Source: Vitrella brassicaformis CCMP3155 (taxonomy: Eukaryota > Protista > Chromerida). From it: 64,000 nucleotides of DNA. Position 1 is the first letter of the stretch; each line of letters begins with the position of its first letter. The stretch covers positions 4,844 to 68,843 of the forward strand of contig CDMY01000620.1 of assembly GCA_001179505.1 (NCBI GenBank), given 5' to 3'. The notes beneath the pieces are model-generated. The model was not told where the DNA came from, did no database searches, and was given only the letters and a program-made list of their open reading frames with translations. Shown piece by piece: positions 3,541 to 31,959 of the stretch. A program made the position numbers and the translations under genes.

Positions 3541-4290
3541 CGACCGCCAGGCGATCCTCGACAAGCTCCTTCGTTCGTTCGTTCGTTAACCTCACGGGGA
3601 CCTTGCCCCCCGGCCCCCCGAAGGGGTACTCAAGAAAGAGTCTGTGTGAGTCCATAGAAAATCACGAGTCCGGAGAAGGAAGCATTGGATGCAACGCAAC
3701 CCACCGCTTTCGCGAGGTCGCAGAAAGTAGAAAAGCGGCTACCGCTTCATGCACATGCAGTGAGCGAGAGGTGAGCAAAGAAAAGGCAAACACAAGAGGA
3801 TCACAATAATTGAGATCCCATCGAAAGTAAACCTTGCCATCAGGCGCCGCAAGGCCATACATACGAACAACACGGAATACTTCCCCTCGTGCAGAGCTGT
3901 GGAGGGGACAGCAGAAAAGAATATGCAGCTCATCCTCAACAGGTGGCACCCACATGTGAGGCAAGAAAAACGGTGCAATAAGGGCAAGAGCGTAGTAAAG
4001 GGCCACCGATACGCCCATCAGTAACTGAACAAGGATATGTGCCGGTCCGAAAAGCGAACAGCACACGACGCTTGGGTCTAGGTAGTGAAAAGTAGCATGG
4101 AAAGGTGGACAAAGACTGGATAAGGCGATGAAGCCAGTCTTGGCCTGACTCAATAATGAAATCATCAAGCTCGACACAAAGTGGCCATCCCTCGTCGACT
4201 TCTTCTGGGTGAGCTCAAAGGGTTAGCGTAAGGTGGGATGTCGAGAGGTCGCCTGGGCTGGCAGCTGCTCTTCATCACGTAGCTCGCTGC
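3541..4290 (+). pseudogene. Degenerate CRE-like reverse-transcriptase fragment split by a LINE insertion
   Basis: DRQAILDKL (3542-3568) and KLDTKWPSLVDF (4167-4202) rejoin into the same peptide seen uninterrupted at about 55660-55790 on the minus strand (IDRQAILDELGTKWPSLVDF), which resembles the NAFNSI.R..IL segment of RLE-type RTs. Confidence 0.55.
3569..4166 (-). mobile_element. 5'-truncated non-LTR retrotransposon (LINE) 3' end with C-terminal CCHC knuckle, (AACG)n tail and 6-bp TSD
   Basis: AAGCTC is duplicated at 3563-3568 and 4167-4172. Minus strand encodes CLTCG (shifted frame) then VEDELHILFCCPLHSSAR, and ends GGGGCAAGGTCCCCGTGAGGTT(AACG)n. Confidence 0.75.
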
Positions 4291-4320
4291 ACTTCCTACA
4301 GTTCCCGAAGATGTGTCGGC

Positions 4321-4470: not shown

Positions 4471-5631
4471 TGAGCAGACTGGGATGGGCGACGTCGAGAC
4501 ACGTTTTGGTTGACGGTGTGGTGATGTCGATGTGGAACCGCGTGGCGGTTGGCTTGGTTGCAGTTGAAACGTTTGCAACCGCTCACTTCTTCACGGATAA
4601 TCAGAAAAGAGATCNNNNNNNNNNNNNNNNNNNNNNNNNNNNNNNNNNNNNNNNNNNNNNNNNNNNNNNNNNNNNNNNNNNNNNNNNNNNNNNNNNNNNN
4701 NNNNNNNNNNNNNNNNNNNNNNNNNNNNNNNNNNNNNNNNNNNNNNNNNNNNNNNNNNNNNNNNNNNNNNNNNNNNNNNNNNNNNNNNNNNNNNNNNNNN
4801 NNNNNNNNNNNNNNNNNNNNNNNNNNNNNNNNNNNNNNNNNNNNNNNNNNNNNNNNNNNNNNNNNNNNNNNNNNNNNNNNNNNNNNNNNNNNNNNNNNNN
4901 NNNNNNNNNNNNNNCAGCTCATCCTCAACAGGTGGCACCCACATGTGAGGCAAGAAAAACGGTGCAATAAGGGCAAGAGCGTAGTAAAGGGCCACCGATA
5001 CGCCCATCAGTAACTGAACAAGGATATGTGCCGGTCCGAAAAGCGAACAGCACACGACGCTTGGGTCTAGGTAGTGAAAAGTAGCATGGAAAGGTGGACA
5101 AAGACTGGATAAGGCGATGAAGCCAGTCTTGGCCTGACTCAATAATGAAATCATCAAGCTCGACACAAAGTGGCCATCCCTCGTCGACTTCTTCTGGGTG
5201 AGCTCAAAGGGTTAGCGTAAGGTGGGATGTCGAGAGGTCGCCTGGGCTGGCAGCTGCTCTTCATCACGTAGCTCGCTGCACTTCCTACAGTTCCCGAAGA
5301 TGTGTCGGCAAATTCTAGACCCCGGCGGGACCGGGGGATGCACACGACAGCCCTTGTCCGTTTTTCCTCAGTGCAGAACACGTGCGTGAAATCCATCTAA
5401 TGAGGGGTATGACGGGCATGTGCAACTGCACTGCCATGTACGTGTAAACTGCGATTTTGTGAGCAGACTGGGATGGGCGACGTCGAGACACGTTTTGGTT
5501 GACGGTGTGGTGATGTCGATGTGGAACCGCGTGGCGGTTGGCTTGGTTGCAGTTGAAACGTTTGCAACCGCTCACTTCTTCACGGATAATCAGAAAAGAG
5601 GCCCCCTCGTAACGGAAGGCGATCGGAAAGG

Positions 5632-28554: not shown

Positions 28555-29418
28555 CACGACAAGGCAAGGTCTGGGCGAAAAGCTGCATGGCGAGCTAAAA
28601 AGCTGGCGATCTGCCCGAGAAGATAGCTTCCGCTGCAAAAAGCCATCTGCCGCTGCAGAAAGACATCTCGCCACTCAAAAAGACAGCTTTCCATTGCAGA
28701 AAGCCAGATGGTCCATCAAAAAGACAGCTTTCCGTACAGAAAAACAGCTTTTTGCCACAGAAAGACAGCTTTCTGCCACAGAAGGACAGCTTTCTCGGGC
28801 TCCAGACAGCTCGCTGAGCCAGACAGCTCGCTGAGAATTACCTCTTGAGCAAAGGGTGTCTGAGTGAGTGACTGTCTGAGTGATTGTCTGAGTGTGTGTG
28901 TGAATGAGTGCGTGGTGTGCATGTGTGTGTCGGTTGGCCATGGATGGATCATGTGAATGGACGGCTTGCAGAGACCCTCCATGGCCAGTTGACGCTTCAA
29001 TGCGTGCATGTGTGCGTGTGAGTGTGGTGCATTGTAGCAGCTGGTGCCTCGAGAGGCAGGCAGCCGTCAGACTGATCAGCGTGCTGTAACGCCCGCCGGA
29101 AAGCTGTCACGCCCATCGGAGAGATGTCACGCCCGCCGGAAAGCTGTCTTTCTGCCTCAGCGAGCTGTCTGGAGCCCGAGAAAGCTGTCTTTCTGTGCAG
29201 AAAGCTGTCTTTCTGTGGCAGAAAGCTGTCTTTCTGTACGGAAAGCTGTCTTTTTGATGGACCATCTGACTTTCTGCAATGGAAAGCTGTCTTTTTGAGT
29301 GGCGAGATGTCTTTCTGCAGCGGCAGATGGCTTTTTGCAGCGGAAGCCATCTTCTCGGGCAGATCGCCAGCTTTTTAGCTCGCCATGCAGCTTTTCGCCC
29401 AGACCTTGCCTTGTCGTG
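28555..29418. mobile_element. 864-bp MITE with CACGAC...GTCGTG termini, ~270-bp TIRs made of ~21-bp AGAAAGACAGCTTT subrepeats, and 2-bp TC TSD (CMC/CACTA-like)
   Basis: 28555 to about 28825 is the reverse complement of about 29155-29418. TC flanks both ends. Confidence 0.8.
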
Positions 29419-29998
29419 TCCCTTTGGTTCATGTGAAAGGCGATGAGTCAAAAGATTTCTGCGCCTCCCCATGAGTGCGTCCACCCCTTGGAGGCTCCCA
29501 GTTACTCACCTGACTACACAGAGATATTGCCGAGAGAGGCAGTCAGCGATAAATGTGGCGCCGTCGATATATGTGTTCAGTTGCCGAGTGGCGAGCTCTG
29601 CACAGTGACCCTTGGCAGCAAAGTTTCTAGTTGCTCTTGCGTGGTGGTTTTGGACCACGCAATGCCACTTGCCACCGGGGTCGTCTGAACGCCGCCACAT
29701 CGTCGAACCAAGACGTCTCACCACCGAAAGCAAACTCCAGAGAGCGTGTATCCCACTCTTCCACAACCACGCAGGTGCCACGTCTGTGTACCACGCAGTG
29801 CAATGCAGCTCAAAATTGTAGATGTGCATGATAGCCCTCATTAACTGATTCACGCACGTGTGCTAGAATGAGGAAGAAAGGGACGAGGGCTGTCGTGTGC
29901 ATCCCCCGGCCTAACTGCCGCCGGGGTTTCGAATTCTATGGGCTAAGGGCCGGTAAGCCCGTTCCGTCCGCGTGTATATGTGGAGGTGTGGATTTGAT

Positions 29999-31720
29999 AT
30001 GAAGGCGCTGATAGTGCTGCTCGTCGCCTTGCCCCTCATCTCAGGACAGGTCTGCCGTACCCTTCGTCGGGTGGTCGATATTGCTGGTTTTCTTATCTTC
30101 AGACAATTTCGACAGACAACGTGACGACTTCCGACAATTTCAGCACTGTGACGACATTTGACGACATTCACACGACAGATGAGGGGTACTATATGAATGG
30201 GGACAAGTGCTTTTGTCCGGGCCTCGGAGGCTCTTGTTATGGCGAGTGTGGGCGCAAATATGACGCTGCAGAAGTGGCCAGTGTTGAGGCCTTCAAATAT
30301 GGACGCTTTGAAACGCGCCTGTTCCCGAGTATAGAGGTTGACGGCACTGTGGCCACGTTCTTCCTCTTCAAGAACGACACGACAAGGTGGAGGGGGCGTC
30401 CTGGCAAGAGATGGATTTCGAGGTCCACGGTATGGGGGCGCACAAAGATGAGCCCATCCAGACTAACGTGATAACGGGCACCATGGAGGAGCGCAGTATG
30501 TCTCAGAAGTTTTTCGCCGCACCCGGTAGGCCAGGACGGAAAGCGGCACAAACGAAAGCTATCAAAAGAGGATTCCACCACTTTGCTGTCGAGTGGACGC
30601 CCGATCATGTCTCATGGTATTTTGATGAGCGACGCATGCGTCGTGTCGTCTCTTGCGATGCTCCCGGAGCAGACGCGGAAGAGTGCAGCCCTGAAGTGTC
30701 ACAGCTCAACGGGGCAGCTAATCTTAGGATGTCCTTGTGGCCAGTTGATCCGTCGCTCAAGTGGGCCGGGCATTGGGCCGGAGTATTCGATGAGAAACAT
30801 ACTAAGCTTCCGCTCACCGTGTACTACGACTACGTGAAGGTGTATGACTATGATCTCATTTCCAAGGGTCGGGAAGGAGGAAGGGAAAGAGAGAACATGG
30901 TGATCATTCGCTTCTGTCTGTCTGTATGATGGTAATCCCTCAGGGTTCCTTGAAGTGGGCTGATGACTTCACTTCGTTCAACAGCTCTCGGTGGGAGGCA
31001 GGCAGACACACATTTAGCAACAACTACGCCCATTTCCGTCCCGACAAAGCCATCATTGTCAAGGGAGATGATGTGAATGCGTCATACCTTGCCCTCTCTC
31101 TTACACCAGCCAATGCCAGCATCGTGGTCCCGGTTCCTCGGGACACCAAGCGCAACCGCTACGAACTCAACAATGCCTGCGAAGCTGGCACGACCGTCGT
31201 GTGGCAAAAAGGGCTGCGCTATGAAGGCGGCATTCTCTCATTCGCAATGCACGTTCCGGCCGATGATGGCCTAGTCCAGTGTGCTGTCGCCTGCGCGAAG
31301 ACAGTAGGGTGTCGCGTATTTTCTGTGTACGAAAGAGGCTATTGCAGTGGCTTCATGTCTCCCGATCAACAAGTCCAGGACGAGAGAGCCGATGCAGGAT
31401 TCATCTGCATGGACGGTGAGCCAGCGGACGATCGTGTTTTCCGTCACCTTCGGGATACCCATCATGGGGCACACTCAGCAGAAGAAGCCCTTGCGAGGAA
31501 TGGGACAGGGGACACACAACATGATGACGTCTCCGACGCCGACATGATCTGCGATGTGCTTTTTGTACACACGTTGATCACTCACAGAATCACGCCTAGG
31601 GTTTGGTTCTTTCTCTTTTTCTTTTCTGTTTTTCTCGGACCGTCTTTCTTCTCCTTTTTTGGCCGTCTTTGTTTTTCTTCTGGACTGTCTGAGTTGCCGA
31701 ATGAATTCATTATCGCGTGA
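29999..31720 (+). CDS. Secreted circularly permuted GH16 beta-glucanase (lichenase-like) with C-terminal PAN/Apple module; one apparent frameshift near 30385; 3' end uncertain
   Basis: Signal peptide MKALIVLLVALPLISG, phase-0 intron 30050-30102, AEVASVEAFKYGRFETRL, catalytic QEMDFE (ExDxE), FHHFAVEWTPDHVSW and YDYVKVYDY. The WADDFTSFNSSRW...LALSLT segment follows the core, then QCAVACAKTVGCRVFSVYERGYC. Confidence 0.85.
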
Positions 31721-31959
31721 AACGGACTTTTTCTCATGATAAAACAGACTTCTTGCCAGCGTCGGGCAAGCCTTGAGAGGCCTTACGGCCCTCTTGATCG
31801 AATGCGACACATTTGCAGTGAAGTGCTTGTGCGAAAAAAAAAGACGCGAGCACAAAACACTTCGCCATTCCGCAGGGCGTCAGTCGAGTCACATAAATGT
31901 GTGCTTGCATGTCAGTCAAGCAATGAATTGATTCCATTCATTCATTCATCCAGTGAATC

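What the first reader, a model, noticed from the sequence alone, without database searches (positions are those of the whole stretch)
29999..31720. Eukaryotic, intron-bearing circularly permuted GH16 of the Fibrobacter lichenase type, fused to PAN/Apple
Seen: the segment that begins canonical GH16 enzymes (W.DDF...SRW...TF..N...L.L.LT) comes after the YDYVKVYDY strand, and the domain starts at AEVASVEAFKYGRFETRL. Known: Fibrobacter succinogenes 1,3-1,4-beta-glucanase is a natural circular permutant with this order. Inference: horizontal acquisition from bacteria, then intron gain, a signal peptide and fusion to an Apple domain typical of alveolate adhesins.
Basis: partly seen in the sequence, partly recalled or inferred. 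Interest (0 to 1): 0.8.

Follow-up and report, generated by a model that had tools for sequence, protein, structure and literature searches.

The report
Broken copy of permuted GH16–PAN gene
This stretch of the alga Vitrella brassicaformis holds a frame-broken copy of an intron-bearing nuclear gene for a secreted, circularly permuted, bacterial-type beta-glucanase joined to a PAN/Apple domain; an intact, expressed twin and about eight further paralogues lie elsewhere in the genome.

Summary
Window 29999-31720 (+) encodes a signal peptide, a GH16 domain and a six-cysteine PAN/Apple-like domain. The GH16 domain runs in the permuted order of the Fibrobacter succinogenes lichenase: core first, then the segment that starts canonical GH16s. 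All three coding pieces best-match PDB 1MVE/3AXD collinearly. A model of a 92-95% identical intact relative superposes on those structures at TM 0.90-0.93, against about 0.6 for canonical lichenases.

Both introns (30050-30102 and 30868-30943) are spliced out in contigs of two RNA-like runs.

The frame changes near 30379-30387 and again at 30944-49, so the real introns cannot join the three pieces. The in-frame RNA comes from a 93-94% identical twin on another contig (CDMY01000857.1).

The organism is Vitrella brassicaformis CCMP3155. At least ten loci carry this permuted GH16, several with Pfam-significant PAN domains and membrane anchors, and a second locus has an in-frame stop.

Every other relative found and checked is bacterial, from at least seven phyla at 31-37% identity. 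The Vitrella genes form one clade (91/85). The donor lineage is unresolved, and nesting inside bacteria is not proven (AU p 0.34).

The scan had already noted paralogues of this gene on other pieces of this genome.

The parts
29948..29998 (+). 5' untranslated leader. A second in-frame ATG at 29978 is used by the deposited model P0001.
   Evidence: The spliced contig in runs X10 and X11 starts at 29948 / 29961. P0001 begins MWRCGFDMKAL.
29999..30049 (+). Exon 1: signal peptide MKALIVLLVALPLISGQ.
   Evidence: Sequence. Identical to the N-terminus of the transcript-derived protein P0078.
30050..30102 (+). Intron 1, 53 nt, GT..AG.
   Evidence: The joint 30046>30100 'skips 53, GT..AG (cut +3)' appears in contigs of X10 and X11. 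It is absent from the DNA-like runs X1 and X4.
30208..30249 (+). N-terminal four-cysteine stretch (C.C...C...C) ahead of the GH16 domain. It recurs in Vitrella paralogues and is absent from the bacterial relatives aligned here.
   Evidence: bacterial sequences.
30253..30384 (+). GH16 core, first part (reading frame 1): AEVASVEAFKYGRFETRL...FFLFKNDTT.
   Evidence: Pfam GH16 profile 21-67. PDB 3AXD/1MVE residues 3-45.
30379..30387 (+). Frame break 1. Reading shifts from frame 1 to frame 0 at Pfam profile position 67/68. The twin copy and the RNA contigs have one more G behind 30379. Read straight on, the ORF stops at 30469-30471.
   Evidence: The window version is reproduced without gaps by contigs of X1 and of X4, which come from two studies.
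30387..30866 (+). GH16 core, second part (frame 0), ending with the YDYVKVYDY strand.
   Evidence: Pfam GH16 43.5 bits, profile 68-167. PDB 1MVE residues 50-171, E 7e-12.
30408..30422 (+). Catalytic motif E-M-D-F-E (ExDxE, no beta-bulge). It aligns with E56-D58-E60 of the F. succinogenes enzyme.
   Evidence: Alignment; invariant columns; motif types per PMC6827312.
30760..30771 (+). A 12-nt in-frame stretch present here and in P0078, absent from the twin copy and from the X10/X11 RNA contig.
30868..30943 (+). Intron 2, 76 nt, GT..AG, phase 1, in the linker that joins the old C-terminus to the old N-terminus of the fold. The position is shared with the twin and with paralogues P0004 and P0002. 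P0005 has an exon boundary at about the same place.
   Evidence: Joint in X10 and X11. Exon maps of L002, L083, L001 and L084.
30944..30949 (+). Frame break 2. The twin, the X4 variant contig and the RNA have two more letters (TT) behind 30945. In this copy the spliced frame runs into a stop at 30961-30963.
30950..31114 (+). Permuted segment (frame 2): LKWADDFTSFNSSRW...YLALSLTPAN. It is equivalent to the N-terminal strands of canonical GH16.
   Evidence: PDB 3AXD residues 184-218. Collinear alignment with bacterial permuted GH16. Fold of the relative P0078.
31178..31408 (+). PAN/Apple-like domain with six cysteines.
   Evidence: Pfam PAN_4 only E 0.14-0.23. BLASTP 3e-6 to the P0030 PAN. Cysteines align with paralogue PANs. 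Atlas neighbours are PAN, score 0.94. Model pLDDT 71; the 50 best PDB matches are PAN/Apple or closely related domains, TMq 0.55-0.66.
31456..31720 (+). C-terminal tail specific to this copy and to P0078, including a phenylalanine-rich hydrophobic stretch encoded by a T-rich tandem tract (31618-31679). Stop at 31718-31720. The twin diverges at 31455/31456, ends ...REL and runs into a dispersed repeat.
   Evidence: Contigs identical to the window over 31426-31747 are present in X10 and X11.

Best explanation
The locus is a disrupted, probably pseudogenised copy of a Vitrella brassicaformis nuclear gene.

The intact form encodes a secreted retaining endo-beta-glucanase of family GH16. It has the circularly permuted topology of the Fibrobacter succinogenes 1,3-1,4-beta-glucanase and is followed by one PAN/Apple domain. 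In the intact protein, the ExDxE glutamates would act as nucleophile and acid/base in a beta-jelly-roll cleft. The PAN domain would bind a glycan or protein and hold the enzyme at the cell wall or surface. That mechanism is inferred, not shown.

The family most likely entered the Vitrella lineage once from a bacterium. It then gained a signal peptide, cysteine-bearing insertions, introns, PAN domains and membrane anchors, and expanded to at least ten loci. These loci evolve by birth and death.

The window copy carries two frame breaks. Its 93-94% identical twin on contig CDMY01000857.1 is intact over the domain and is the transcribed form seen in the RNA-like runs.
For: Organism and copies:
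- P0001 (100% identical, Vitrella CCMP3155) is the deposited model for this locus.
- The twin is P0003 / L002.

Permutation:
- Collinear best hits to 1MVE/3AXD.
- Collinear alignment with bacterial homologues, with 35 invariant columns including E-D-E.
- The model of the relative P0078 has pLDDT above 90 over the GH16 part.
- Foldseek's top nine hits are the F. succinogenes lichenase (TMt 0.90-0.93). Engineered permuted jellyrolls 1CPN/1CPM follow at 0.81, and canonical lichenases at about 0.6.

Introns:
- Both are removed at GT..AG in contigs of X10 and X11 and are present in X1 and X4.
- The linker intron is shared by paralogues.

Frame breaks:
-.
- The window version is reproduced in independently built contigs of two studies.

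Family and origin:
- Only 76 hits at E<=1e-3 among 1.84 billion representatives. The top ones are all Vitrella; every other hit that could be named or placed in context is bacterial or from metagenomes, and nearly all are permuted.
- 240 bacterial genome loci were found, from Fibrobacterota, Bacteroidota, Myxococcota, Ignavibacteriota, Calditrichota, Chlorobiota and Spirochaetota.
- The Vitrella genes form one clade, 91/85.

PAN.
Against: - The runs are kept as contigs only. The depth of each variant, and the absence of an in-frame window-type read, cannot be judged.
- X1 is probably the source of the assembly, so only X4 independently confirms break 1. For break 2, X4's listed contig shows the twin version.
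- dN/dS between the two copies is 0.43, which does not by itself show loss of constraint.
- P0078 is a mosaic of window-type and twin-type stretches. A third, intact version carrying this copy's tail may exist, or the transcript assembly is chimeric.
- The tree does not place Vitrella robustly inside bacteria, so the direction of transfer rests on taxonomic distribution.
- No enzymatic or binding activity was tested.
- Chromera walls contain almost no 3-linked glucose (PMC9293442), so a mixed-linkage glucan substrate in the alga's own wall is doubtful.
Confidence: 0.72

Rival explanations
1. The window copy is a working gene. On this reading the two frame breaks are sequencing or assembly errors, or are bypassed by recoding (frameshifting or RNA editing).
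For: - Both breaks sit at short G or T runs.
- The catalytic motif and all cysteines are intact in the broken copy.
- Contigs identical to the window's unique 3' part occur in the RNA-like runs.
- P0078 combines an intact frame with this copy's tail.
Against: - Contigs built independently from X1 and X4 reproduce the window version at break 1, and X1 does so at break 2, without gaps.
- The in-frame RNA contig differs from the window at about 70 further positions that match the twin locus L002. It is therefore the twin's transcript, not an edited version of this one.
- The deposited annotation could only model a 186-aa truncated product.
Confidence: 0.13
2. The window copy and the twin are two alleles or haplotypes of one locus rather than duplicated genes. 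The culture would then carry one null and one working allele.
For: - 93-94% identity over 1.15 kb.
- The two versions stand at about equal depth in X4 at 30967-31091.
- The twin contig starts inside the gene, so its upstream flank cannot be compared.
Against: - Downstream of 31455 the two sequences share nothing. The twin continues into a dispersed repeat and then other genes, Chloroa_b-bind and Pkinase.
- Differences are patchy (0 to 17 per 100 nt), as expected from gene conversion between paralogues.
- An insertion in one allele could still produce the downstream break in similarity.
Confidence: 0.25
3. The permuted order arose independently in the eukaryote from a canonical eukaryotic GH16, or the family is ancestral in alveolates and was inherited vertically.
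For: - Circular permutation of GH16-like folds has a eukaryotic precedent: fungal TOS1, cited in PMC4176579.
- The tree does not reject bacteria forming one clade apart from Vitrella.
Against: - The Vitrella sequences align collinearly and share 35 invariant columns with the bacterial permuted family.
- They group with that family against canonical-order sequences at 100/100.
- No other eukaryote appeared among the 76 hits whose sources were checked. Hits in the Vitrella clade are all Vitrella.
Confidence: 0.05
4. Bacterial contamination of the assembly.
For: The closest non-Vitrella relatives are bacterial.
Against: - There are two GT..AG introns, spliced in RNA-like runs.
- The gene lies in a 64-kb eukaryotic window carrying retrotransposons and intron-bearing genes.
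- There are ten paralogous loci on large Vitrella contigs.
- Identity to any bacterium is only 31-37%.
Confidence: 0.01

Closest known systems
Fibrobacter succinogenes 1,3-1,4-beta-D-glucanase (lichenase; PDB 1MVE, 1ZM1, 3AXD), the 'natural circularly permuted jellyroll'
   Same: - Same order of segments: core with ExDxE first, then the strands that open canonical GH16.
- Collinear sequence match for all three pieces.
- The model of the intact relative superposes at TMt 0.90-0.93, rmsd 2.0-2.5 Å, 31-34% identity.
- The catalytic E-D-E and many cleft residues are invariant.
   Different: - Eukaryotic nuclear gene with two introns and a eukaryotic signal peptide.
- An N-terminal four-cysteine stretch and three insertions, one of them bracketed by two cysteines.
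- A C-terminal PAN/Apple domain in place of the bacterial Ser/Pro-rich tail or CBMs.
- This copy is frame-broken.
- Activity is untested.
- Not specifically closest to Fibrobacter in the tree.
Canonical-order GH16 licheninases (CAZy subfamily GH16_21; Bacillus, Paenibacillus; PDB 1GBG, 1MAC, 3O5S)
   Same: - ExDxE motif without a beta-bulge.
- Beta-jelly-roll fold.
- NCBIfam BglS is the best bacterial model hit, though far below its cut-off.
- GH16_21 already spans bacteria and chytrid fungi (PMC6827312).
   Different: - The order of segments is rotated.
- Sequential structural alignment reaches only TMt about 0.6.
- CAZy subfamily assignment was not tested here.
PAN/Apple modules of apicomplexan microneme proteins (Eimeria tenella PAN 1HKY, Toxoplasma MIC4 4A5V, Sarcocystis SML-2 2YIL) and of plasma kallikrein / factor XI / HGF
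   Same: - Six-cysteine pattern.
- Strand-strand-helix-strand-strand-strand topology in the model.
- These entries fill the list of best fold matches.
   Different: - Pfam scores for this copy are far below threshold (12-13 bits against 27).
- Foldseek E-values are weak (5e-3 and above) and the model is of medium confidence.
- Here the module is attached to a glycoside hydrolase, not arrayed in an adhesin.
- No binding was tested.
[quoted passage not shown] 2010, as cited in PMC4176579)
   Same: A eukaryotic precedent for a permuted GH16-like jelly roll.
   Different: A different, remotely related family. It did not appear in any search here. It was recalled only from a reference list and was not compared.

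Membership tests
Glycoside hydrolase family 16 (Pfam PF00722) | Profile match above the curated cut-off | tested here: met
   Piece 2 scores 43.5 bits against a cut-off of 22. Piece 1 scores 15 bits and continues the same profile (21-67, then 68-167). The intact relative P0078 scores 65 bits.
Glycoside hydrolase family 16 (Pfam PF00722) | Catalytic ExDxE / ExDxxE motif on a beta-jelly-roll | tested here: met
   EMDFE at 30408-30422 aligns with E56/D58/E60 of 1MVE. The jelly-roll fold was modelled for the relative P0078 (92-95% identical over the aligned stretches), not for the broken copy itself.
Circularly permuted GH16 lichenases (F. succinogenes type) | Catalytic core precedes the segment that is N-terminal in canonical GH16 | tested here: met
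   Collinear with 1MVE residues 3-45, 50-171 and 184-217. A profile built from permuted members matches P0078 and the paralogues in one stretch, whereas canonical proteins match in two swapped stretches. Fold ranking.
Circularly permuted GH16 lichenases (F. succinogenes type) | Hydrolysis of beta-1,4 bonds next to beta-1,3 in mixed-linkage glucan (EC 3.2.1.73) | not testable with these tools
   Only conservation of cleft residues was seen. Substrate is unknown.
Circularly permuted GH16 lichenases (F. succinogenes type) | An intact reading frame that can give the whole domain | tested here: not met
   There are two frame breaks, at 30379-30387 and 30944-30949, with premature stops at 30469-71 and 30961-63. 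The twin P0003/L002 and P0078 meet this feature.
PAN/Apple domain (Pfam PF00024 / PF14295) | Profile match above the curated cut-off | tested here: not met
   PAN_4 scores 12-13 bits against a cut-off of 27, E 0.11-0.23.
PAN/Apple domain (Pfam PF00024 / PF14295) | Conserved cysteine pattern and homology to an accepted PAN domain | tested here: met
   BLASTP E 3e-6 to P0030 residues 420-498. These overlap its Pfam PAN_4 hit (residues 434-483; whole-protein score 41.8 bits) and PAN_1 hit (444-491; 29.6 bits). Five cysteine columns are invariant in the alignment with seven paralogue domains, and the first cysteine is shared by all that reach it.
PAN/Apple domain (Pfam PF00024 / PF14295) | Apple fold: helix packed on an antiparallel sheet | tested here: inconclusive
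   Model pLDDT is 70.8 from an 8-row alignment. All 50 best PDB matches are PAN/Apple or closely related domains, with TMq 0.46-0.66, but E is 5e-3 or weaker.
CAZy subfamily GH16_21 (licheninases) | Subfamily assignment by CAZy/dbCAN models | not tested
   No CAZy subfamily models were on hand. The subfamily paper's main text mentions neither Fibrobacter nor permutation.

The most novel reading that the evidence does not exclude
Vitrella, a free-living photosynthetic relative of Apicomplexa, may have built a family of surface 'enzyme-adhesins' by fusing a bacterial permuted beta-glucanase to PAN/Apple modules and membrane anchors. If the PAN modules here bind wall or prey/host glycans, this family would show PAN/Apple domains serving as carbohydrate-targeting modules of wall-active enzymes in a free-living relative of the lineage that uses such domains in microneme adhesins. 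The broken and nonsense copies would then record ongoing birth and death, with gene conversion, within that family.
Probability: 0.12. Interest if true: 0.7.

Novelty: new variant of a known kind. Interest (0 to 1): 0.45.

Why it matters
Natural circular permutants of the GH16 jelly roll are textbook cases known from bacteria. This work shows that the same permuted family lives in a eukaryotic nucleus. There it has spliceosomal introns, secretory-pathway adaptations, PAN/Apple and membrane-anchor fusions, and has expanded to about ten loci.

The case offers three things:
- a clean example of bacterium-to-alga gene transfer followed by domestication;
- a set of natural sequences for asking how a permuted fold tolerates insertions and disulfides;
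- a lead on what PAN/Apple domains do in a free-living relative of apicomplexan parasites.

For annotation, the deposited models of this locus (186 aa) and of a second locus (108 + 112 aa) are artefacts of broken genes. The proteins are in public databases only as 'GH16 domain-containing protein'. The literature held here links Vitrella neither with GH16 nor with the permutation.

Tried and rejected
- Searching related bacterial loci with the 49-row alignment A1 failed because it has no conserved stretch. The 8-row alignment A2 worked.
- The word-indexed protein search with the 180-aa ORF found only two short Vitrella fragments because of its length window. The exhaustive HMMER search was needed.
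- Pfam and NCBIfam gave no significant family for the third piece.
- Literature searches for Vitrella plus GH16, or Vitrella plus glycoside hydrolase plus HGT, found nothing relevant. The chromerid genome paper mentions neither PAN/apple nor glucanases in its main text. The GH16 subfamily roadmap does not discuss permutation.
- A quick tree suggested nesting of Vitrella inside bacteria. The careful tree and the AU test showed this is not robust, so I do not name a donor.
- I considered RNA editing or recoding as the source of the in-frame RNA. I rejected it because that RNA carries about 70 further differences that match the twin locus.
- I considered a processed retrocopy as the source of the spliced contigs. 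No spliced joint appears in the DNA-like runs X1 and X4.
- The broken gene was read through only with X at the two breaks, for the tree.
Full report
**What is in the sequence**

The window comes from Vitrella brassicaformis CCMP3155. A 186-aa deposited protein (P0001, 'GH16 domain-containing protein') matches it at 100%. On the + strand an ATG at 29999 opens a typical signal peptide. An in-frame ATG at 29978 is the alternative start.

Three coding pieces follow:
- 30103-30384, in frame 1;
- 30387-30866, in frame 0;
- 30944-31717, in frame 2.

Pfam GH16 matches the first piece at profile positions 21-67. It matches the second at 68-167, with 43.5 bits against a cut-off of 22. The domain therefore continues straight across a change of reading frame.

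**The permuted order is real**

Each of the three pieces has the truncated Fibrobacter succinogenes 1,3-1,4-beta-glucanase as its best solved-structure match, and the matches are collinear: chain residues 3-45, 50-171 and 184-217 of 1MVE. The segment W-x-D-D-F...R-W...T-F...L-x-L-T opens canonical GH16 enzymes.

An eight-row alignment with bacterial homologues is collinear throughout. It has 35 invariant columns, among them the E-x-D-x-E motif.

I modelled the intact relative P0078, residues 18-450, with a 49-row alignment. The GH16 part has pLDDT above 90. The Foldseek ranking against the PDB is what a permuted topology predicts:

| PDB matches | TMt |
|---|---|
| F. succinogenes enzyme (nine entries; 1MVE is titled 'natural circularly-permutated jellyroll') | 0.90-0.93 |
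| Engineered permuted Bacillus jellyrolls 1CPN / 1CPM | 0.81 |
| Canonical lichenases | about 0.6 |

**The introns are real**

Runs X10 and X11 each hold a spliced contig (1370 and 1188 nt) laid as 29948-30046 | 30100-30868 | 30946-31455.
- The first joint removes 53 nt with GT..AG ends, which is intron 30050-30102.
- The second removes the 76-nt intron 30868-30943.

The DNA-like runs X1 and X4 cover both introns unspliced and show no joint.

The second intron sits in the linker between the old C- and N-termini of the fold. The twin copy and paralogues P0004 and P0002 share this position, and P0005 has an exon boundary at about the same place. The intron therefore predates much of the family's expansion. 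Because the bacterial relatives are already permuted, the intron has nothing to do with the origin of the permutation.

**This copy is broken**

First, between 30379 and 30387 the reading shifts from frame 1 to frame 0. Read straight on, the ORF stops at 30469-30471, before the catalytic motif.

Second, intron 2 has a phase-1 donor (G|GT at 30867/30868). After splicing, the frame gives ...K-G-F-L-E-V-G-stop at 30961-30963. The deposited model ends exactly this way. The homologous reading (S-L-K-W-A-D-D-F) is in another frame.

The spliced RNA contig is in frame at both places. It has one more G behind 30379 and two more letters behind 30945. It also differs from the window at about 70 other positions and lacks 12 nt at 30760-71.

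Those differences match a second genomic copy, contig CDMY01000857.1 (L002; protein P0003 = CEM35486.1, partial). That copy aligns to window 30292-31455 with 71 mismatches in 1152 positions and exactly these three indels. So the in-frame transcript belongs to the twin. It is not an edited form of this copy.

The window version of both break sites is reproduced, without gaps, by Logan contigs of X1. Break 1 is also reproduced by a contig of X4, which comes from a different study. At 30967-31091, X4 holds both versions at similar depth. The breaks are therefore in the reads, not made by the assembler. One caveat applies: contigs hide minor variants.

Further observations on the two copies:
- dN/dS between them is 0.43. 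Differences are patchy, 0 to 17 per 100 nt, which suggests gene conversion.
- Beyond 31455 the copies share nothing. The twin ends ...R-E-L-stop and runs into a dispersed repeat that also occurs at window 4168-4310 and 5157-5299.
- Contigs identical to the window's own 3' part (31426-31747) occur in X10 and X11. This copy, or a version sharing its tail, is therefore probably transcribed as well.
- P0078, a 531-aa protein from a 1775-nt JGI record, combines twin-type and window-type stretches. It may be a third version or a chimeric assembly. I could not resolve this.

**The PAN/Apple domain**

In this copy Pfam PAN_4 reaches only 12-13 bits against a cut-off of 27. Four other lines support the assignment:
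- BLASTP gives E 3e-6 to residues 420-498 of paralogue P0030. That stretch carries P0030's Pfam-significant PAN_4 hit (residues 434-483; whole-protein score 41.8 bits) and PAN_1 hit (444-491; 29.6 bits).
- The cysteines align with those of seven paralogue PAN domains.
- The language-model atlas returns PAN clusters as nearest neighbours, score 0.94.
- A medium-confidence model (pLDDT 71) has strand-strand-helix-strand-strand-strand topology. Its 50 best PDB matches are all PAN/Apple or closely related domains: factor XI and prekallikrein apple domains, the HGF N domain, the Eimeria PAN module, Toxoplasma MIC4 and Sarcocystis SML-2. TMq is 0.46-0.66, with weak E-values.

I accept the domain as PAN/Apple-like. 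The curated Pfam threshold is not met.

**Family and origin**

An exhaustive HMMER search of 1.84 billion representatives with the 160-aa core found only 76 proteins at E<=1e-3.

The best are all Vitrella: the twin, P0004, P0005, P0006 (with PAN and trefoil), P0007, P0008, P0025 and P0030 (the last two with two PAN domains and a membrane anchor). With the window copy and L001, that makes at least ten loci.

L001 has an in-frame stop inside the GH16 core and was annotated as two fragments. It is a second broken member.

All other hits whose source could be read are bacterial or from metagenomes. Two that branch near Vitrella lie in plainly bacterial gene neighbourhoods. Nearly all are permuted.

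A scan of species-representative bacterial genomes found 240 loci, with 31-37% identity among the best 80. They come from Fibrobacter, Chitinispirillaceae, Bacteroidales, Paludibacteraceae, Cytophagales, Sorangium, Ignavibacteriota, Calditrichia, Chlorobiota and Spirochaetales.

In a careful ML tree (68 rows, 237 columns) the nine Vitrella rows form one clade (91/85). The permuted family is separated from two canonical-order sequences at 100/100. The base of the family, however, is a trichotomy of Vitrella, a small bacterial clade and the other 54 bacterial rows. A tree holding all bacteria together is not rejected (AU p 0.34).

Single acquisition from bacteria is therefore the economical reading: one eukaryotic species against at least seven bacterial phyla. 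The donor is unknown, and 'Fibrobacter-type' describes the topology, not the source.

**Likely mechanism (inferred)**

The intact family members should be secreted or surface-anchored retaining endo-beta-glucanases. The two glutamates of the ExDxE motif, which lacks a beta-bulge as in licheninase-like GH16 subfamilies (PMC6827312), would do the chemistry. The PAN modules would target the enzyme to a glycan or protein.

Substrate is open. Chromera walls are mostly 4-linked glucose with almost no 3-linked glucose (PMC9293442). Vitrella walls have not been analysed in what I could read.

The window copy itself cannot make this enzyme.

**Novelty and verdict**

The proteins are in public databases with an automatic GH16 label. 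No paper in the held library links Vitrella with GH16, with this permutation or with such a transfer.

I rate the finding a new variant of a known kind: the bacterial permuted GH16 lichenase fold, domesticated in a eukaryote with introns, PAN fusions and paralogue expansion. Interest is moderate. This locus is a decayed member rather than the working gene. The scan's earlier notes list paralogues on other pieces of this genome, in line with what the protein searches show.

Noticed in passing
L001:3260-4394 (Vitrella contig CDMY01000365.1): Another paralogue of the permuted GH16 has an in-frame stop inside the core (...APGR*RN...). It is annotated as two fragment genes of 108 and 112 aa, so it is a second decayed family member.
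   Followed up: partly
window 28630-29343: Directly upstream of the gene lie arrays of 20-21-nt (and 41-nt) tandem repeats in two opposite orientations: AAAGACAGCTTTCTGCCACAG, then GAAAGCTGTCTTTCTGCCGCA. A related motif, AAACGGACTTTTTCTCA, recurs at about 31720, 31975 and 31995, just after the stop codon.
   Followed up: no
L002:1148-1290; window 4168-4310 and 5157-5299: A 143-nt dispersed repeat, 100% identical in three places, starts just upstream of the point where the twin copy stops resembling the window copy (window 31455). It may mark an insertion that cut off the twin's C-terminal tail.
   Followed up: partly
window 31618-31679: The phenylalanine-rich hydrophobic stretch of the predicted C-terminal tail is encoded by a T-rich 23-nt tandem tract. 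It could be a membrane anchor, as in paralogues P0007, P0008, P0025 and P0030, or a chance reading of low-complexity DNA.
   Followed up: no
window 30208-30249, and paralogues P0004, P0005, P0030: A short four-cysteine stretch (C.C...C...CGR) precedes the GH16 domain in the Vitrella paralogues. A two-cysteine insertion (S-C...C-S-P) sits inside the core. Both are absent from the bacterial relatives aligned here and look like secretory-pathway disulfide additions.
   Followed up: partly
P0009 (Chitinispirillales bacterium) and P0012: P0009 carries two permuted GH16 domains in tandem. P0012 matches the profile as C-half followed by N-half. Tandem copies of this kind are the intermediate expected in the duplication model of circular permutation.
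   Followed up: no
runs X13-X17: Marine sediment metagenome runs of 2023-2025 hold 8-28% of the sampled words of this stretch. Vitrella-like DNA may therefore be present in sediments.
   Followed up: no
P0078 (JGI record, 1775 nt): This transcript-derived protein is a mosaic. It is twin-type at both break sites and in most substitutions, but window-type at the 12-nt indel and in the whole C-terminal tail. It is either a third gene version or a chimeric assembly.
   Followed up: partly
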